A stretch of DNA of 64,000 bases from Trichosphaerium sp. ATCC 40318 (lineage: Eukaryota; Protista; Tubulinea). Position numbers and translations under genes: made by a program. Position 1 is the first letter of the stretch. The number at the start of each line of letters is the position of its first letter. Positions 10,687 through 58,976 of this stretch are shown here, piece by piece. Under the pieces are notes generated by a model that saw only the letters and a list, made by a program, of their open reading frames with translations, ran no database searches and was not told the origin of the DNA. The DNA lies in the NCBI GenBank assembly GCA_038496445.1, contig JALMLS010000536.1:63865-127864 (forward strand), read 5' to 3'.

Positions 10687-12077
10687 TTAAAAATCAGGCC
10701 AAAAGTATAGAAAGGAGGGAATTTGGCATCCTAGAATGTCTATCATTTCCTTTGTTATTTGAGTATCACTAATCTCAATTTGATCAAGGCTTGTTAAATT
10801 AACAATACCATCATCTGTGATTTGTGAGCAGCCTTCGAGATCAAGTTTCTTAACACCAATAAGACTGTTCACTCCTTTGTCAGTTATAAGCTTACACTCA
10901 CAAAGGCTTATGAATTTAACACCAACCAAGTATTGTAATCCTTTATCCGTCACAGATGTATTATCAAGCAAAATTGTATGTACTCCAGCAAGTGCCTTTA
11001 AAGTACTGTCGTCAACACAATCAAGATATGAAATATTTATGACTTTTACACCTGCCAATTGTTTTATCCCATCATTTGTTAAAGATTTGCACATACCCAA
11101 GTCAATATGGTGTACACCTGCCAAACATGATAGGGTATCATCTTTTAGTTGTGTACAACCGCCAAGCTCTATACGTGGTATACCTGCCAAAAGTTTCAAC
11201 ACATCATTTGATATTTGAGTGCAGCCATCAAGATTAATTTTTTTAATCTTCTTTGTTGTTTGATTTTGTGTCAATAAATACTTTACTCCTTCATCAGTAA
11301 TATTCTTGCAGTCACTGAAAGATATGAAACTTGCATTTGTTAGTGCTTTTACACTGTTATCAGTAATATTGCATCTGTCAAGCTGTATCTTGTGTACACT
11401 ACCTGAAATGGCAATAACACCTTTGTCAGTAATTCTGGCGCAACTGGATACATCAATAGTGTGGACTCCAGAGAGTGCCGAAAGTCCTTTATCTGTTATT
11501 TTTGTCCGCATAACATCAATTGTGTGAATACCACCAAGTTGTTGAAGCCATTCATCTTCTGCATACCCACTTGATATCCTTAGTGTATGAATACCATGAA
11601 GTGATTTAAAACTGCAACTACTTTCTTTTGTATGTAGTTTCAGAGAATGTACACCTGAGATATGTTCTAACATAGCTTCTGTTAACGAAATATTATCCCT
11701 TATATGGAGGTGACGGATACCAGAGATGGTTTTAAAGTCATCATCACTCATTGTAAAATTGCCACGAATAACTATTTTCGTATTTTTTAAAAGAGGACTT
11801 CCGTTTAGTTTGAGTAGATTTTCTCTTGACTTGACAGTCACCTTTAAATACCCCAAATGCTCTAGAATGATCGTAGAAAACAGTTTACAAACAAATGTGG
11901 CAGATATACGGCATTTCTTACCCAACAACGCCAGGATACAAAATATTATTTCTGTTGGCAGATAAACCAATTCTAATGGCCTATGCATATTGTCAGCACA
12001 ATAAACAGGGTTTATGTTTAATTGAGCCATAAACGGCCTAATTAATGTGTGAGAACATACTCTGAAGAACCAAGCAT
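10687..12077 (-). CDS. F-box/leucine-rich-repeat protein (copy 1)
   Basis: Short first exon MLGSSE plus a phase-2 intron. F-box-like LPTEIIFCILALL...VCKLF, followed by cysteine-containing LRRs (GVHTIDVSSCARITDKG). Confidence 0.9.
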
Positions 12078-27374: not shown

Positions 27375-28330
27375 ACAATTGCCACCAACCAAGCCATTTT
27401 CAATAAACAATACATTGTCTACCTATGGGGAATGATAAACAAACGCAATAAACAAGTGCTATATATTTTATTTCTCTGTCCTATCAAGTACAATACTTAT
27501 TGCAGTAGCGCAACCACACCCTCGGCATTTTGTCCTACCAACAAACAACTTAAAAACAAGGCCATGACATACAATTTGCTACAGTTGTGTTGCATCCTAG
27601 GTAATCAATCATTTTGTTTGTTATTTGAGTGCCGTGACAGTATATCAAGGCTTGTTAAATTAGAAACTAGTCCCTTGTCCATTCACCAAAAATACCCCTT
27701 AGCTAGACAACTTTGTCACACAGAGTACTTTCTTAACCAACAACAAAGTACACTTAATCTGTTGGAATTTTAAGGCCTAAATATTGATTAGAACAGTTTA
27801 AAGAGGGAGAACACAATTGAGACTTTTTTAAGCTTTCACATTTTAGCTCACTCATTTGTTATATTAAGTCAATATTTTTCACAACATGTGTATCATTTTT
27901 ACTATATGTGCAGGGTCATTAAACCAGACTGTGGGTTCTTTTTAATTCTTCTCTATTTCCATTTATGCAACAAATTCTTTTCCACCAATATGAGTAAGGC
28001 TTACAAGGAACCTCCCTTTAAAATCATCATCACATCCTTCATTGTACTAAATGCACATAGTTTTGAATAATCATTCTAACCTGTGCACCTTTAGCAAATA
28101 CAAGATGCTGTGTAAATCATTGTTTACTCCTTACCTGTTTTTAAAATAACAATGTTATACCAAGAAGTTGACACAATACTTAATGTGTTCAAAAACTCAA
28201 GTTTTTTAAATCATCAGATTTTTTTCAACACCACTATAGGAGTTTAGACAAACCTTAGTTTTTCGGAGAACTCACATTCACCTTAAAAGAAACTGTTCAC
28301 TACACTCCATCAACTATTGCTATAAATTGC
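27375..28330 (-). pseudogene. Decayed F-box/LRR gene copy plus 3' flank
   Basis: Minus-strand NLTSLD...TQITNKMIDYLGC at 27590-27665 (frameshifted) matches the C-terminus of the intact LRR genes. Weaker LRR-like matches at ~28030-28330. Confidence 0.65.
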
Positions 28331-42870: not shown

Positions 42871-44219
42871 ATGTTTAATGAATACAAACAAAAGATATTA
42901 ATGACGCCATTGAAACACATAAGTCCTAATCGTAAAGCAAAGAGGAAGAGAAAAAGACTACACTTTTCAAATACCAATAATTTTCTTGGAGTATTTTTCC
43001 GCGCTGTAAAAACAACGAAGTCAACAAACTATCATCAATTTCGACCTTTGCTTTGCTTACTGACGAGAAGTAACGTCTCAGGTTACTGTTCAGTGAATCG
43101 CCCCAGTCGAGGCCACCCAAAAAGACCATAGTTGAACAATACAAACTGTCGTACAACAAATGCTTGACAACTTATCCCAAAGTGCTAACTTATTTGATTT
43201 CTTCCTAATACTCGTCCTACCGCTCAGATTTTTTTCAGTCAAGTGTACAGTACGCCTATTTTTTACTAATTTCGCTCCTAAACAAACTCTTCGACTTTGT
43301 GTTTTCGTCACGTGCGTGAAACGTTTCTCTAAGCTAAATAAAATTGAAGGTTCATTTCACAACTGGAAGGTCTACACAAGGATGGCTTGTATACTTAAAT
43401 AATGAGAATAAGAGGAGGTTTTTATCTAGAGGAAAGAACATAGAGTCCGTCCTCAGAAACGCATACAAGTTTTGTATAAGATCAACAATCCCAGCACGTG
43501 ATTTTGATACAACTTTCCGTCTTTTCAGTTTCGTTCAAAAAGAAACAAAAAAAACAAGTACTCCACGTTCTCTTTTTATTAACGAACATGTCTAGAACTG
43601 TCGTAGACGTTTTACAACACTCACCAAAGGCGGCGAAGAAGTAAACGAGTTCGTGATATTCCACCCAGAATCTCCAGCGGATATGAAGGCCAACTACGAT
43701 CCACAACACTACAGAGGTGTCAGGCAAAGAGTTTTTAAAGGTACTAGAATAGACGCAAGACAACTCGGGTTAATTCTTCTCCTTAGGCTTCTCACATGTC
43801 TCCCCTCTTGTAGAAGCGCACGATGATCCTAATGAGGATCCAACCGAACCGGAACAAGACTACGAGGAGCCACAGTCTCCAAACACGGAAGAATATACCG
43901 AGTCTGAAAGCGAACACGAGGTAAAGAAAGAAGACCCTATGGACGACTCTACTGAGAGTAAGTACAATTAGTTTTCTTAGACTTCTCATTTAAAGATACC
44001 ACAGGTATTGAAGCGAGGCTACTCCGTGACAATGCCTTGCTGCGGCAAAGATGTTTCATGCTAGAACAGAAAGTTGCTTTGTTCGAGATTCAACAACGTG
44101 ATCAACTACGATATACACCATTTACAGTGTCTTCACAAATTAATGCCTATACATACGATCAGCCCGGAATTATAAGTATAAATGAGTTACTAAGGTTCTT
44201 AAATCCGCACCAATACTGA
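42871..44219 (+). CDS. Orphan protein, possibly nuclear (basic NLS-like tract, acidic region, short coiled coil)
   Basis: RKAKRKRKR, spliceable exons, acidic DDPNEDPTEPEQDYEE, LLRDNALLRQRCFMLEQKVALF. Exon chain partly ambiguous. Confidence 0.5.
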
Positions 44220-44574
44220 CCTTTGTATTTTTCTTTGTAAATAAATGTACATAGTTTTGTTTTTCTCAAAGGTACTTTCGAATTAAGCTATTTTCAAAGA
44301 CAAGATCTGAGCGTACATTGTGTTGATCACATGCTATGCCAAGAATCAGACAATGCTGAATCTTCAGTCAAATCAGTACAATAATAAATCTGACAGCGAA
44401 CCAGTCGTTACACTGCCTCCATCTATGTTTTACGTGCAAAAGGCTTTGAAGAGCAAGACATTTCGCGACGTCATTTAATAAACTAGTTAATGGTAGAATT
44501 TATATTGCAATAACATCAAAATAATATCGGCGCTAGCGTGCTGCCTCTTATTGAAAAAAACCCTCAATAGAAAC

Positions 44575-44716
44575 AATCTTATGGGTGGAAAGAATATAGA
44601 TCTATCATTTTGTAAACAAACAATAGACAACGGAGTTTCTATTAACAAGCCTTGATAACATTTTCTGTTGTGGCACTCAAATAACAAACAAACTGATTGA
44701 TTATCTAGGATGACAA
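44575..44716 (+). pseudogene. F-box/LRR 3' remnant
   Basis: LMGGKNIDLSFCKQTIDNGV...LTSLDNIFCCGTQITNKLIDYLG* resembles the C-terminus of the LRR genes. Confidence 0.75.
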
Positions 44717-52460: not shown

Positions 52461-54394
52461 ATGATTAAAAAGGTAAGGGACCGAGTTAAACGCTTACAAG
52501 GAATAACATCTCAACATCCTCGTACGCTCAAAATATTACGCCAAAACATTATACTTAGCATCATTATAGCGGTAATACGAAAAACATTTCCAAAAAACCA
52601 ATGGGCTACTGTAGAAAATCAACGAGTATTTCTGGACACAGCACTAGCACCGTATCTACCCGTTAAAACGCTTGATGATTGGTACAGGGTGAAACAAACC
52701 GATTTTACAAAACTAGATGGCTTGACGCTTTTAAAAAAGTGCGTGGTGCTGTCTGAAACGCTTTTCGGCGTTATCTAGAAACACCTGATGATAACAACGT
52801 TTTTGACCGCGCTTTCTAGGTACAATGGCTCTGTACACCAGTTAGTTCAATCATTGTACCCAGAGCATGATTGGGTACCATGGCAGTTCGTGTACGCCGA
52901 TTTTTTTTTTGAAATGACCTGTCAAATGACGTACGTCATTTTGACACATTGTAGAAATACACCACAAGGATTTTGGCAAAGTTTATCTAACCAAAGAGCC
53001 TTTTGTGATAACGAACTAAGACAACGCCTTAATTTAACGCGTATGGAGGATATGTATAAAGTCACAGCGATGGATATAAAAAACAATGGCGGTGTGTCAT
53101 TGCTGTCAATGTATGGCAACTCAGTGCAAGCACTTCTAAGAGCTGTTTATCCTGAACATAATTGGATTGCTTGGAAGTTCAAGTACGCTAGAATCGTTGA
53201 TCTCCTGGCGTTAATCATCAACTTAGAAAGTGTGAGCAACTTTACTGGCAAAAACCTCGTAATGTAAAAGAGTTCTTGTCGTGTACGTCTCTGAGACATT
53301 TATTCTTTTGGGGTTTTTTTTTGACATTTATGTTTTTGGTCCTTTAGATGTTGAAAATAAGCTTAATATATCCACTCCTGAAGAGTGGTTTCATGTAACT
53401 GGTGCGGATATCGCTAGACATGGTGGTAGTGGTTTAGTTTCACAGTATCCTGAGTGCCTACGCATATTACATCCAACATATCCATGGCATGCTTTATACA
53501 AATCGAAAGAAAGAAAACCAGCCATAAAGTACTTTAATCTCCAACTCATAATCAAGTTTAACACTAATAGAAAAGAGAGAGGGTACTGGCAAAAGGATGA
53601 GAATATTCTTACATTTCTGAAAGGTACAACTGATAAAGACTCTTTTTTTAGAGTTGACATTTTTATGTTTTAAAGGCGCTGCTGCTAAGCTGAATATCCG
53701 AGTACCTGAGGATTGGTATCGCGTGTCAAAAAACCAACTGAAAGAATTGGGTGGCTCTTCTGTTATAAGAGTTTTTCCAGGGTGTCTGAAGCTTTTGTAT
53801 CCAACAATCGATATAGAACAAGCTCACTTTCAATTCAACGAAAAAAAAGCAATTCAAAGGTATTTATTTACTGTTTTTGATGAGGCTCTCGTCATCTCAC
53901 AAGTACCTAGGATGCTCCGAGTAGCGATAAAGAGTATATTCCCAGACCTAGAAACGTTTGAAGAGTACACTTTGACGCGTATTTTGCGATCAAGGACACC
54001 GATAAGCGTTGATATTTATGTACCGAGTCTTGGTATTGCTATTGAGTATCAAGGTACGTCAAGAATTGGAGCTTGCATCCTGACTCTGACAAAAAAGGCG
54101 AACACCATTACAAAGATACTTTGGGTACCTACGGACCTGCGAGATTACAGCGTTCACGAGATAAAACAAAGAGAGAAAAGTGTGAATCTGCAGGCACGTT
54201 TCAAGAGGGCATAAGTGGTATCTCAATATTTCTCTGTAGGTATAACGCTAGTGCCTATTCCATATTGGTGGAAAGGAGACGAAGACAGCGTTAGAGCAAC
54301 AATCAAGCATTTTCGACCTGACATTCATGTTGACGTTCCAAAAGGCGCTAAACCGCTGTTAGATTATACCGCGCATGGCAGTGGAGTATCCTGA
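52461..54394 (+). CDS. Trp-rich tandem-repeat protein with C-terminal PD-(D/E)XK-like nuclease domain (start uncertain)
   Basis: About 4 repeats W..NQR.F...DDWY.V....GG..LL..Y...L...YP...W; VDIYVPSLGIAIEYQGEHHY...RDKTKREKC...GITLVPIPYWW. Confidence 0.75.
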
Positions 54395-54467
54395 GCCATT
54401 CTTATTCTTAAGAAAAAAACCTCATACACTTGTAAATATAAGCACAGCGGCATAGGGTCCCATAAAA

Positions 54468-57254
54468 ATGGGAGGTTGGTTGTATTTATCTCCATGTTTT
54501 AGAGTTTTTCTTATGAATTTCGTTAAAGCTATACTGTACTTAGCGAGCGAACTAGAGCAAGGAGAAAATGAAACATAGTGTTTTTTTAAGCCTCAATATT
54601 ATTTGTGTCCTCACAGCAAACAAGTGCTCAGAGGAAGTATGGTAATAGCATCATGGGCGATAGGAAAAACAAGTGAAGAACTGCGCGTACCTTTTGATGT
54701 TGTTAGCGGATCGAAATTTTGGTTTAGAACTTAAAGACTGTTGTTAAGTTCCAGCTTTCAGATAACGTAACAGCCAGCGTTTCTAAACAGTCATCACAGC
54801 AATCAACAATGGAAGAGAAGAGCAGACCGCAAATAAAAGAATTGTTAGATGGTGTATGTTGTTAGGACGTGATAAATTTTTGCTCACTATGTACTCAGGT
54901 CGACAGCGCATTAAATACCGTGTTTGATGGCGTTCGTAGTGAAAGTATAGATCAAACAACTGTAAAAACGTTATTGGCATACATAAAAAACATTATACAA
55001 CGCGGTAACGATGAGAAATACAGAACTATCCACAAAACTAACGCGGCGTTTCAACAAGTGCGTACTACGTATCCTCTTACTTTTATTGCACTCAAGGGAG
55101 TGCTTATTATTAGTACAATAATAAATCTGACATATTGCCAGCGAATCGGTCGTTACCCAGCCTCTGTCGATGTTCTACGCGCTGTAGGCTTCGAAGAGCG
55201 AGAGAACTCTTTTGTAATGCCAGCAACAGATATTCATCTCAGGTAAACCGCGCACCTGTTTTCCTAACTACATACGCTCTCGTATACCACGTTAACGCAT
55301 TTTTAGATTAAAAATCCTTCAGTACGCTGGACGCGTTGCTACATCGTTTCTGGCTAACCAAAACAACCTACTCGAGTTTGAAGCCACACAGAAATCAGGT
55401 ACGAGTATTTCTTAGGACGCAAAAGTGTCCTCTAACTGAGAATTTAGCTGAATCTGGATCAGCAACTGGAAAACCTGCTTTCGATTTTAATCAAATGATG
55501 GCAGCCGAAAAGAAGAAAGCACTGACAAAGAGGAGGATGGGTAAAATGAGTGAAAGTGAGCATGAAGATAGAGCTATAGGCATGCTACTAGCTGGTGTTT
55601 GTGCTGATATACTAGGTAAGATATGAGAAAAACATACTACATTTCCAAAACCTATGTTCAACGAAAAGAGTCATTGTCTTCTACCCGAGTTTTGACTTAT
55701 TGTTTTAATTAGCTGCTCCATTTGATGGTTGGTCTGGTCAAGCTGTTGAATCAAAACACCCTGGTGGTGTATGGGTATACGAGCAAAGTACTCGTGAAGA
55801 CTTACCTCGTATGTAAACTGATAATGGAAACGAACATCTTTTTTTTTTTTTTAAACCTCTGATCTAGGTGAACGTGGAAGATACACTGAAAATACACAAG
55901 TACTCTTAGCAATATCACAGAGTATAATAGAGTGTTCAGAGCTTGTACCAAAAGCAGTAGCATCACATTGTACAGGTATAGCCCAGAATCAAAGTTTTTG
56001 TGTAATCTTAGTTTTTGAACATAGAGAGATACTCAACGGATAGACTTTATAGCTCGTGTAAGCTTGTCTACGAACTACTAAAAAGCGGTAAAGCAAACTA
56101 CCTACAAAGCGCAAGAACAGCTTTACCGTCAGAGTTTAACGATGCCAGTGCACTCATACGTGTCGCACCTGTGGCATTTACTTTTCAACGCTCTGGGTGA
56201 GTCACAAATAGACTTTTTTGTTTTTTTCTTATTTGCTTGACAGGGACCGCATTCTTTATGAAGCTGTTTGTGGTGTACTGTTAACAACACATGTTAATCC
56301 AGAAGGTATGCAGATCGAGTATAGAGAGTGTAATTGTAATATTAATACTCGTTTAGCTGTGGACGGAGCTTTTGTTTATTGTAAGGCACTTGCTGAAATA
56401 TTACTTCTTGAGGTTCGTTTGCTGCTTTTTTTGGCTTCTGAGGCCTTTTAATTTAACTTATTTGTTATTGTTAGGATCGTACAAAGATTGATGTATCTAA
56501 GTGGGTTAAAGAAATGGCACATACAGCAAAGACAAAAGGATTGCGGTCGAAATTGTTAAAACTTATTGCACTTATTGATAAATTCCAGAGTGGTGATAAT
56601 AAGGGTATTAGTGATCAAAAATTTTTGAGGTACATAACCATCTACAAATAGCACCTTATTAAGCATTATGTTTAATGGTGTTATAGGTTTATATCAAGCG
56701 ATGAAAAGAACCAAGCAACAGAGGTATGATTTTTCATTTTTTTCGAACATTCACAATTTGAAAATTTTTTCTTTCTATTTTTTGATGTCTTTGTACCTCC
56801 TTGGAAGCGCTTTTATACCCTTAAAATAATGCCTGTGCCATTTCATGTGGATAATATACTGGGATTCGTGAGGGTTTTTGGTGGCTAGTTTGCTAACATT
56901 TTGATTATAGATGACAGTTTGTGCTTTATGGTTTTTTATCCGATATATAACTGATCCCGTTGAAGCAATATCAAAAGTTATACAAGCAGGTGGGCGTACT
57001 AGTACATTAGCTACAGCTGTAGCAATGCTTTTCGGAGCTTTCTATGGAGCTGGATTCATACCAAGGTACTATCAAAGAGGTAGTTGTGTACTACATTGTG
57101 CTTATTTGGTTTTTTTTTTCAAAGAATTTGGACAGAACAAATGGAACGAGATGCCTTTGATGAAACTGTAATGGTAGCTAAACAACTTTCTACAAAGGAT
57201 TTTATTGGATTTTGCTTATCAGTTGAAGAACAGAAAGCACAAAGAAACTTGTAG
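54468..57254 (+). CDS. PUB domain fused to a degenerate ADP-ribosylglycohydrolase (ARH/DraG-fold) domain
   Basis: PUB: TLLAYIKNII...EKYRTI..TNAAFQ...LRAVGF. ARH: DRAIGMLLAGVCADILAAPFD, YTENT, ALIRVAPV, TTHVNPEAVDGA, AGGRTSTLATAVAMLFGAFYG..FIP. Confidence 0.85.
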
Positions 57255-57318
57255 TAATACACCAAAAAAAACCCGTGTAAGAAGTTTTAACTAGTTAGTA
57301 CTAAATTGTTGATTTACT

Positions 57319-58745
57319 TTAAAACTCGGGCCAAAAGTTTATCCTTAGCCCTGTATTGTCTATGCATCCTAGAGAATCAATCATTTTCTGTGTTATTTGA
57401 GTATCTTTATGAGAAATGTATTTAAGGCTTGGTAAATTAACAATTCCTGCATTAGTGATTTGTGAGCAGCCTTCTAGAGCTAATTTGTGGATGTTAACAA
57501 GACTGTTCACTCCTTTGTCAGTTATAAGCCTACAATAAGAGAGGACTATGACTTTAACACCAACTAAGTAGCTTAAACCCTCATCTGTAACAGGTGCACC
57601 AACAATGCATATTGTATGTACTCCAGCAAGTGCTTTTAAAGTGCTGTCATCAACGCAATCAACTCCTGTAATATCTATGACTTTTACACCTGCCAATTGT
57701 TTTATCCCGTCATTTGTTACAGAGCTACAATAACTCAAGTCAATATGCTGTGCACCTACAACACATGGTATAACATCATCTGTTATTTGGTAACAATCGC
57801 CAAGTTCTATACAAGGTATACCAGCCAAAAGTTTCAACACATTGTTTGATATCTGAGTGCAACCATGTAGCCTAATTATTTTAATTGTGTTAGTTGTTTG
57901 ATTTCGTGTTAACAGATACTTTACTCCTTCATCTGTAATTTTCTTGCAGTCATTAAAAGATATGAAACTTGCATTTGTTAGAGCTCTTACACTTTTATCT
58001 GTAATGTCACATCTGTCAAGATTTATCTTGTGTACACTACTTGAAATGGCTATGACACCTTTGTCGCTGATATTTTCACAATCAGATAAATCAATAGTGT
58101 GTACTCCAGAGAGTGCTGCAAGTCCTTTATCTGTTATTTTTGTGTATGAAATATCAATTGTGTGGATTCCAGCAAGTTCTTGAAACCATTCATCTCTAAA
58201 ATGCCCATATGATTCTAGTGTATGAATGCCAGCAAGTTGTTTAAATCCAAAACGTGTCAAGGTGCATTCATCTTCTATATGTAGCTGCAAATGATGTACA
58301 CCTGAAATATGTTCTAACATAGTATCTGTTAAGGAAATAACACCCAGTATTTCAAGGTGACGGACACCAGAGAGAGATTTAAAGTCATCATCAGTCATTG
58401 TAATATCGTCAATAACTATTGTCGTATTTTTCAACAGAGCCTTCCCGTTTAGTTTGAGTAGATTTTCTCTTGACCTCACATTCACCTCTAAATATCCCAA
58501 ATGCTCTAAAATGATTGTAGAAAAGAGTTTACAAACAAATGTGGCAGATATACGGCATTTCTTGCCCAAAAACGCCAGAATACAAAATATAATTTCTGTT
58601 GGTAGCCAAAGCAATTCTAATGGCCTACAAGAGTATAAGTACCTTTCAATACATATTAGTCACAGTTACGAAAACAGACTTCATATAAGTCTATAAAACA
58701 TGCTCATTAAACTTACTCCGCTAGAACTGTTGGTGTTTGAAGCAT
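57319..58745 (-). CDS. F-box/leucine-rich-repeat protein (copy 2)
   Basis: Close paralog of 10687-12077 with the same phase-2 first intron (MLQTPTVLAE|PLELLWLPTE). Confidence 0.9.
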
Positions 58746-58976
58746 ACTGGCGAAGAAATGCTATTTTATTTTTTGGACACGTGGTTTTTTATTCAAGATC
58801 TTTTCAATTCTTGTTGAACGTAAGTTGACCACAAATGCAGTAATTTGTTAAACGTTTTCCATTTTTAGTTAGAAAGACATCAAAATTGCCGTCATTTCCC
58901 TAAACGGACATAGAGAACCAAAACATAAAGTTTGGAATTAGCTATTTGGGTTTGGTCACGAGACGATTTCTTACTA

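What the first reader, a model, noticed from the sequence alone, without database searches (positions are those of the whole stretch)
54468..57254. PUB domain fused to a catalytically dead ADP-ribosylhydrolase: candidate ADP-ribose-to-p97/Cdc48 adaptor
Seen: one spliced frame joins a PUB domain (~54900-55240) to a full ARH/DraG fold. The metal-binding motifs are altered: TDD reads TEN, GNG..MR reads DASALIR, and GGDTDT reads GGRTST. Known: PUB domains bind the p97/VCP C-terminus, and ARH1/ARH3/DraG need those acidic residues for Mg/Mn catalysis. Inference: an intact, intron-rich pseudoenzyme that may recognise ADP-ribosylated substrates and hand them to p97. I do not know this architecture from characterised proteins.
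Basis: partly seen in the sequence, partly recalled or inferred. Interest (0 to 1): 0.78.

Follow-up and report, generated by a model that had tools for sequence, protein, structure and literature searches.

The report
PUB domain fused to dead ADP-ribosylhydrolase
An amoeba-type genome carries an intact 14-exon gene that joins a docking domain for the protein-extracting machine Cdc48/p97 to an ADP-ribose-removing enzyme fold that has lost its metal centre; I found no description of this combination, and its function is still a guess.

Summary
Fourteen GT-AG exons (54809-57254, + strand) give one 511-residue frame. It has an N-terminal PUB domain (Pfam 53 bits), a basic linker and a full ADP-ribosylglycohydrolase (ARH) fold (77.7 bits against a profile of 12 prokaryotic ARH proteins).

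All four metal-binding aspartates, invariant in those 12 references, are replaced (TDDT to TENT, DTDT to RTST). The catalytic Glu is Asp, and an invariant pyrophosphate-contact Gly is Ser. Published mutagenesis shows that losing one metal ligand abolishes ARH1/ARH3 activity, so this domain is almost certainly not a hydrolase.

The PUB pocket keeps its Tyr and cornerstone Asn. It has lost the Arg that clamps the p97 C-terminus in PNGase.

The ligand pocket is half remodelled, and the vertebrate pseudoenzyme ADPRHL1, with the same loss pattern, cannot dock ADP.

No ortholog and no paper with this architecture was found, but full-length searches and structure prediction were impossible because the spliced protein has no reference.

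The scan noted the same architecture on another piece of this genome (s1-401120, unchecked). The CDS starts at 54809, not 54468.

The parts
54809..57254 (+). Whole coding region of the PUB-ARH gene: 14 exons, 511 aa. Exons: 54809-54853, 54899-55057, 55142-55242, 55307-55398, 55448-55615, 55713-55808, 55868-55975, 56025-56196, 56244-56305, 56357-56412, 56475-56629, 56687-56723, 56911-57065, 57125-57254.
   Evidence: model; every intron is GT-AG. (introns break the frame). (exon GC 0.40 against intron GC 0.33; branch-point-like CTRAY 7-27 nt before the AG in 10 of 13 introns).
54899..55398 (+). PUB domain, about residues 16-125, exons 2-4. Pocket residues Y56 (55019-55021), H60 at the PNGase Arg55 position (55031-55033), and cornerstone N63 (55040-55042).
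   Evidence: PF09409, 53.2 bits. (alignment to PNGase PUB structures 2ccq/2hpl). (collinear with other PUB domains across the exon 2/3 join). (28 of the 30 Atlas feature hits fall in PUB clusters).
55448..55560 (+). Linker, residues about 133-170, with a basic stretch K-K-K-A-L-T-K-R-R-M-G-K (residues 154-165) that looks like a nuclear localisation signal. It also holds internal Met codons (M149, M150, M162, M165) from which an ARH-only isoform could start.
   Evidence: sequence only. The NLS reading is inference.
55561..57155 (+). ARH (ADP_ribosyl_GH) fold, residues 171-479, exons 5-14.
   Evidence: 77.7 bits, profile positions 3-309 of 323. (collinear with E. coli YegU 4-303). (PF03747 on exons 13 and 7). 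(PDB ARH chains, ARH3, DraG). (all 30 Atlas hits are PF03747).
55724..55726 (+). D193 at the position of the catalytic, metal-II-associated Glu.
   Evidence: Glu in 11 of 12 reference ARH proteins.
55885..55896 (+). T227-E228-N229-T230 in place of the [T/S]DDT metal motif.
   Evidence: both Asp are invariant, 12 of 12..
56138..56161 (+). Diphosphate loop: N295, the inserted D-A, S298 at the invariant Gly, and R302 kept.
   Evidence: Gly in 12 of 12 references. PMC6309922: this buried Gly and the His contact the pyrophosphate and are absolutely conserved in ARH1 and ARH3.
56287..56292 (+). T329-H330, the conserved T-H motif (pyrophosphate-contact His), retained.
   Evidence: His in 12 of 12 references.
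56989..57006 (+). G444-G445-R446-T447-S448-T449 in place of GGDTDT.
   Evidence: aligned to ARH3 'GGDTDT'-type chains. (both Asp invariant, 12 of 12).

Best explanation
This is one gene that makes one protein: an N-terminal PUB domain, a basic linker, and a C-terminal ARH-fold pseudoenzyme.

Shown:
- Both domains are present in one spliced frame.
- The PUB PIM pocket keeps its Tyr and its cornerstone Asn.
- The ARH fold is complete, but all four metal-binding Asp and the catalytic Glu are replaced.

Inferred:
- The protein cannot hydrolyse ADP-ribosyl bonds.
- R446, sitting where the first Asp of DTDT should be, probably fills the empty metal site and pairs with the two acidic residues that remain (E228, D193). 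This would hold the fold together without Mg.
- The PUB domain docks the protein on a PUB-interacting motif, most likely the C-terminal tail of Cdc48/p97. The protein would then act as a non-catalytic cofactor whose ARH module supplies the recognition surface.

The 65% case would resemble vertebrate ADPRHL1.
For: Gene model. Introns interrupt the frame.

PUB domain above the Pfam cut-off. PUB collinear across the splice junction. Tyr and Asn of the PIM pocket conserved against PNGase. Their role is described in PMC4017264.

ARH fold over residues 171-479 at 77.7 bits. D1-D4 are invariant in 12 of 12 references but E/N/R/S here, while D186, T227, T230, N295, R302, T329, H330, G444, T447 and T449 are kept. 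This is a selective loss of the metal site, not general decay.

Any single metal-ligand mutation abolishes ARH1/ARH3 activity, and Mg-I is mainly structural: PMC6309922.

Precedents: ADPRHL1 lost three of four Asp and is a functional pseudoenzyme (PMC4990356). ARH3-like proteins fused to ubiquitin-system domains (zf-RanBP, zf-UBP) exist in Acanthamoeba and Capsaspora (PMC4245714).

Runs X1, X3 and X4 hold 0.36-0.48 of the sampled 31-mers. A fully spliced mRNA would hold 0.42-0.51. This is suggestive only.
Against:
- No ortholog was recovered, so neither purifying selection nor conservation of the fusion could be tested.
- PNGase Arg55, which clamps the p97 C-terminus, is His here, so the partner may not be p97.
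- The metals that orient the distal ribose are gone, and the pyrophosphate Gly is Ser with a two-residue insertion.
- ADP could not be docked in ADPRHL1, which has the same loss pattern.
- Bacterial ARH-family members such as YegU sit in nucleoside-utilisation operons, so even the ancestral ligand need not have been a protein-linked ADP-ribose.
- No structure model could be made.
Confidence: 0.5

Rival explanations
1. The PUB domain does not bind Cdc48/p97. It binds an internal PUB-interacting motif of another protein, as HOIP's PUB binds OTULIN and SPATA2. The protein would then belong to a different complex.
For: The Arg55 of PNGase that closes the pocket on the p97 C-terminal carboxylate is His60 here. 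PMC4017264 shows that removing this Arg lets PNGase accept C-terminally extended motifs, and that HOIP has a Lys pointing away at that place. The nearest PUB domains found also lack the Arg: Q/K in P0003 and N in P0002.
Against: Per PMC4017264, the three PUB domains it tested (PNGase, UBXD1, HOIP) all bind the p97 tail at micromolar affinity. The Tyr and the cornerstone Asn are intact.
Confidence: 0.2
2. The model wrongly joins two genes or two transcripts: a small PUB-only protein (exons 1-4, ending in retained intron 4) and an ARH-only protein starting at M149, M150 or M165 in exon 5.
For: Reading through intron 4 gives a stop after 5 codons. Exon 5 holds several Met codons upstream of the ARH fold. 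No RNA evidence is available.
Against: Only about 80 nt would separate the two genes, whereas 414 nt separate this gene's ATG from the upstream gene's stop. The frame stays open for 16 codons between the exon 5 acceptor and the first Met. Intron 4 has a canonical GT..CTAAC..AG. An earlier first-stage note reports the same fusion on another piece of this genome (s1-401120, unchecked).
Confidence: 0.07
3. The ARH domain is still an enzyme, using one metal or none, or acting on another ribosyl substrate.
For: E228 and D193 are conservative replacements that could still hold one cation. The T-H motif, N295 and R302 are kept.
Against: Three of five acidic ligands are gone, and one is replaced by a cationic Arg. 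Single-ligand mutants of ARH1 and ARH3 are dead (PMC6309922).
Confidence: 0.05
4. This is a decaying, functionless relic of a former PUB-ARH enzyme.
For: Catalytic residues are lost. No orthologs were found. A relic PUB exon copy lies at 44372-44458.
Against: All 14 exons are open and all 13 splice-site pairs are canonical. Ten family-invariant non-metal positions are retained, while only the metal site is changed.
Confidence: 0.05

Closest known systems
ADPRHL1 (ARH2), the vertebrate cardiac ARH pseudoenzyme
   Same: [quoted passage not shown] It is functional despite having no hydrolase activity (PMC4990356).
   Different: ADPRHL1 has no PUB or other added domain and acts on actin filament assembly in the heart. 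Nothing here suggests orthology, and independent loss is the likelier history. Here an Arg replaces the first Asp of DTDT.
PNGase / NGLY1 (PUB + transglutaminase-like glycanase core)
   Same: An N-terminal PUB domain tethers a domain from a family that strips a post-translational modification to p97. The motif D-E-K-Y-R-x-I-x-x-x-N-x-A-F is shared.
   Different: The PNGase catalytic domain is active and unrelated to ARH. PNGase has the Arg55 clamp for the p97 C-terminus, which is His here.
ARH3-like proteins with ubiquitin-system domains (Acanthamoeba zf-RanBP-ARH, Capsaspora zf-UBP-ARH)
   Same: These are protist ARH-family proteins fused to modules of the ubiquitin system (PMC4245714).
   Different: The partner domains differ, and no PUB was reported. 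That paper discusses them as ARH3-like enzymes, whereas this one lacks the metal centre.
HOIP PUB domain with OTULIN/SPATA2
   Same: It is a PUB pocket without the C-terminus-clamping Arg, and it can bind internal PIMs (PMC4017264).
   Different: HOIP is an RBR ubiquitin ligase of animals. No PIM-bearing partner is known here.
Active ARH1/ARH3/DraG hydrolases
   Same: The fold is the same, with the same order of motifs and the same T-H and M/I-R-V-A-P elements.
   Different: The signature E...[T/S]DDT...D[T/S]D[T/S] reads D...TENT...RTST here.

Membership tests
PUB domain (Pfam PF09409) | Profile score above the curated cut-off | tested here: met
   53.2 bits against 34.3, E 2.9e-14.
PUB domain (Pfam PF09409) | PIM-pocket Tyr (PNGase Y51) and cornerstone Asn (PNGase N58 / HOIP N102) | tested here: met
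   Y56 and N63 align to them. Their roles are taken from PMC4017264.
p97-tail-specific PUB (PNGase type) | Arg that binds the C-terminal carboxylate of p97 (PNGase R55) | tested here: not met
   H60 sits at that position, followed by K61.
p97/Cdc48 cofactor | Physical binding to Cdc48/p97 | not testable with these tools
   This needs a binding assay, or at least the organism's Cdc48 C-terminus, which is not in the window.
ADP-ribosylglycohydrolase fold (Pfam PF03747) | Profile match over the whole domain | tested here: met
   Exon 13 alone scores 33.3 bits against the 26.2 cut-off. The spliced protein scores 77.7 bits over positions 3-309 of 323 in a 12-member profile.
Active ARH hydrolases (ARH1/ARH3/DraG type) | Binuclear metal ligands E ... 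[T/S]DDT ... D[T/S]D[T/S] | tested here: not met
   They read D193, T-E228-N229-T and R446-T-S448-T. The Asp positions are invariant in 12 of 12 references.
Active ARH hydrolases (ARH1/ARH3/DraG type) | Buried Gly and His that contact the pyrophosphate | tested here: inconclusive
   The His is kept (H330). The Gly is replaced by S298 after a two-residue insertion.
ARH pseudoenzymes (ADPRHL1-like) | Intact fold with most metal-binding Asp lost | tested here: met
   for this protein; the loss pattern of ADPRHL1 is in PMC4990356.
ARH pseudoenzymes (ADPRHL1-like) | Orthology to vertebrate ADPRHL1 | not tested
   No eukaryotic ARH sequences could be obtained, because the spliced protein has no reference for a full-length search.
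ADP-ribose reader | Binding of ADP-ribose or ADP-ribosylated peptides | not testable with these tools
   Structure prediction of the spliced protein was not possible; a binding assay is needed.

The most novel reading that the evidence does not exclude
This amoeba lineage has wired ADP-ribose signalling directly to the Cdc48/p97 segregase by putting PUB domains on several ADP-ribose-processing folds. Earlier first-stage notes report PARG, NADAR and ARH fusions (unchecked). In that scheme the metal-free ARH protein is a true ADP-ribose reader that hands ADP-ribosylated clients to Cdc48 for extraction. It would be the first ARH-fold reader and the first direct ADP-ribose-to-p97 adaptor.
Probability: 0.12. 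Interest if true: 0.8.

Novelty: new variant of a known kind. Interest (0 to 1): 0.5.

Why it matters
In animals, p97/VCP meets ADP-ribosylation only indirectly, through ubiquitin or SUMO (my own knowledge, not tested here). A protein that puts a p97-docking PUB domain on an ADP-ribose-family fold would be a direct physical link. It would also be a second, independent example of an ARH pseudoenzyme alongside ADPRHL1.

If the earlier unchecked notes of PUB-PARG and PUB-NADAR fusions in the same genome hold, the set would point to a lineage-specific coupling of ADP-ribose removal to Cdc48. That coupling could be tested with a handful of recombinant proteins.

As it stands, this is a solid new domain architecture with a speculative function, in an organism that is hard to work with.

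Tried and rejected
1. RNA evidence. The look-up of sequencing runs gave four holders.
   - After that I sent no reference containing those places to sequence search tools, and I masked them in the script.
   - One exception, which I declare: a findings look-up by place covered 52968-58754 by coordinates and so included them. It returned nothing.

2. Exhaustive phmmer of the PUB piece (114 aa with intron 2 read through) against 1.84 billion representatives. There were three hits: P0001 with no PUB or ARH family, and P0002 and P0003 with PUB but no ARH. This shows no close ortholog and that the window's own protein is not in the library. More distant orthologs would fall below the threshold.

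3. Metagenome (two scans) and viral contig scans with exon 13 and exon 2 peptides found nothing. tblastn of exon 13 against phages found nothing.

4. A word search centred on the nearest PUB protein (P0003, region 149-265, which admits 248-789 aa candidates) found only its own close kin. The Pfam-annotated ones carried PUB and none carried ARH.

5. Atlas feature searches with pieces returned only single-domain PUB or ARH clusters of similar length. They say nothing about fusions.

6. Aligning exon pieces to YegU with MAFFT, to build a full-length query, placed most pieces wrongly, so I dropped it.

7. An exact look-up of the exon 13 ORF in public assemblies found nothing on record.

8. PDB searches with exons 5, 7 and 8 alone gave no ARH hit. 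These pieces are too short.

9. Left out because the spliced 511-aa protein has no reference and I did not type it: structure prediction, fold search, a full-length Pfam scan, and full-length homolog searches.

10. Rejected readings:
   - A second PUB gene at about 44.4 kb, which is a 95-bp relic.

Full report
**What is there.** The window is AT-rich (GC about 0.37) and intron-dense. Between 54809 and 57254 on the + strand, fourteen exons joined at thirteen GT-AG introns (45-187 nt) give a 1536-nt frame of 511 codons ending in TAG.

- Nine introns contain an in-frame stop, and two of the other four shift the frame, so the long frame exists only after splicing.
- Exons are GC-richer than introns (0.40 against 0.33). 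Ten of thirteen introns have a CTRAY-like branch site 7-27 nt before the AG.
- The minus strand under the gene has no ORF longer than 65 codons.
An in-frame stop lies 84 nt upstream of the ATG at 54809, and I take 54809 as the start. An unseen 5' exon cannot be excluded without RNA.

**Domains.** The stretch 54899-55240 (exon 2, in-frame intron 2, exon 3) matches Pfam PUB at 53.2 bits, against a cut-off of 34.3. The spliced N-terminus aligns without a gap across the exon 2/3 join to the PUB domains of two metagenomic proteins, which supports that splice.

Exon 13 alone passes the Pfam ADP_ribosyl_GH cut-off (33.3 against 26.2 bits, profile positions 238-285 of 287). Exon 7 matches positions 45-76 weakly.

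The spliced protein has no reference, so I tested it inside scripts.
- It aligns collinearly with E. coli YegU: residues 173-469 against 4-303.
- It scores 77.7 bits (E 5.6e-26 for one target) over positions 3-309 of a 323-position profile. I built that profile from twelve annotated ARH-family genes of bacteria and archaea: yegU from the E. coli K-12 chromosome and eleven plasmid-borne genes.

So the fold is complete and spread over exons 5-14. No other PUB or ARH gene lies in the window.

**The catalytic site.** In that alignment:
- The four aspartates of [T/S]DDT and D[T/S]D[T/S] are invariant in all twelve references. They read E228, N229, R446 and S448 here.
- The Glu of the N-terminal motif (11 of 12) is D193.
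- The invariant Gly of the N-G loop (12 of 12) is S298, after a two-residue insertion.
- Kept are D186, T227, T230, N295, R302, T329-H330, G444, T447 and T449.

PDB chains of ARH3 align exon 13 in the same register, GGDTDT-type against GGRTST.

Rack et al. 2018 (PMC6309922) give the motifs as E...SDDT...DSDS (ARH1) and E...[T/S]DDT...DTDT (ARH3). They also show:
- Mutating even one metal ligand abolishes activity.
- Mg-I is mainly structural.
- The metals contact the distal ribose.
- A buried Gly and His, absolutely conserved in ARH1 and ARH3, contact the pyrophosphate.

The domain is therefore almost certainly not a hydrolase. The pattern is a selective loss of the metal site with the rest of the family signature kept, which argues for a maintained fold rather than decay. 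I infer, without a model, that R446 occupies the former metal site and pairs with E228 and D193.

Half of the known ligand contacts are changed: the metals and the Gly loop. In ADPRHL1, the one studied ARH pseudoenzyme, three of four aspartates are lost in the same way, ADP cannot be docked, and the protein works on actin assembly instead (PMC4990356). The family fold also does not imply protein-ADP-ribose as ligand. YegU-type members sit next to nucleoside permease and sugar kinase genes. I put retained binding of an ADP-ribosyl-type ligand at about one in three.

**The PUB side.** Against PNGase PUB structures, the motif D-E-K-Y-R-x-I-x-x-x-N-x-A-F is shared. Elliott et al. 2014 (PMC4017264) describe three relevant residues:
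- The Tyr is a wall of the PIM pocket.
- The Asn is the cornerstone whose conservative mutation abolishes binding.
- PNGase Arg55 is the residue that binds the p97 C-terminal carboxylate and closes the pocket.

Here Y56 and N63 are kept and Arg55 is H60. A PIM-binding pocket is therefore likely. Cdc48/p97 is the most probable partner, because the three PUB domains tested in that paper (PNGase, UBXD1, HOIP) all bind its tail. An internal motif of another protein is a real alternative.

**One transcript?** This could not be tested.

Indirect points favour the join:
- A canonical intron 4.
- An open frame from the exon 5 acceptor onward.
- Only about 80 nt between a hypothetical PUB-only stop and the first Met of exon 5, whereas 414 nt separate this gene from the one upstream.
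- Three small runs from two studies hold 0.36-0.48 of the stretch's 31-mers, close to the 0.42-0.51 that a fully spliced mRNA would hold. That last point is suggestive, not proof.

**Relatives and novelty.** The comparative evidence is thin, and the limits matter.
- An exhaustive search of 1.84 billion representatives with the PUB piece found three proteins: one with no PUB or ARH family, two with PUB but no ARH.
- Scans of metagenome and viral contigs with two exons found nothing.
- A word search around the nearest PUB protein found only its own kin.
- These blanks exclude close orthologs only. Full-length searches were not possible.

In the literature, no paper holds both 'PUB domain' and 'ADP-ribosylglycohydrolase'. 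Perina et al. 2014 list ARH3-like fusions with zf-RanBP, zf-UBP and WD40, but none with PUB.

Earlier first-stage notes of this scan, all unchecked, report the following on other pieces of this genome:
- The same PUB-dead-ARH architecture (s1-401120).
- PUB-PARG and PUB-NADAR fusions.
- A follow-up agent's guess that the organism is the marine amoeba Trichosphaerium.

I use these as leads only.

**Verdict.** It is a new domain architecture made of two known kinds.

Noticed in passing
window 44372-44458 (+): This is a 95-bp copy (76% identical) of the 3' end of intron 2 plus the first two thirds of exon 3 of the PUB-ARH gene. The 21 intron bases before the branch site are identical, so they are better kept than the exon. 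The copy lies just downstream of a gene that appears to end at 44219, and it scores only 14 bits with a PUB profile. It looks like a relic of a DNA-level duplication of the PUB exon. That would fit PUB spreading by exon shuffling in this genome.
   Followed up: partly
window 57363-57400; also 27591-27628, 10726-10762 and, inverted, 44677-44712: A stretch of about 36 nt at the 3' end of the minus-strand F-box-LRR gene (57319-58614) recurs three more times in the window at 84-89% identity. These are probably the conserved C-terminal ends of dispersed members of that LRR family.
   Followed up: no
window 55058-55141 and 56306-56356: Introns 2 (84 nt) and 9 (51 nt) are multiples of three without in-frame stops. 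Retaining them would insert 28 residues into the PUB domain or 17 residues into the ARH fold without breaking the frame. Homology favours their removal.
   Followed up: partly
window 55507-55545: A basic stretch (K-K-K-A-L-T-K-R-R-M-G-K) in the linker between PUB and ARH looks like a nuclear localisation signal.
   Followed up: no
window 43962-44219 (+): An 85-codon open stretch with a coiled-coil-like sequence, ending in TGA, follows an acidic exon at about 43774-43968. It is an unannotated gene immediately upstream of the PUB relic.
   Followed up: no
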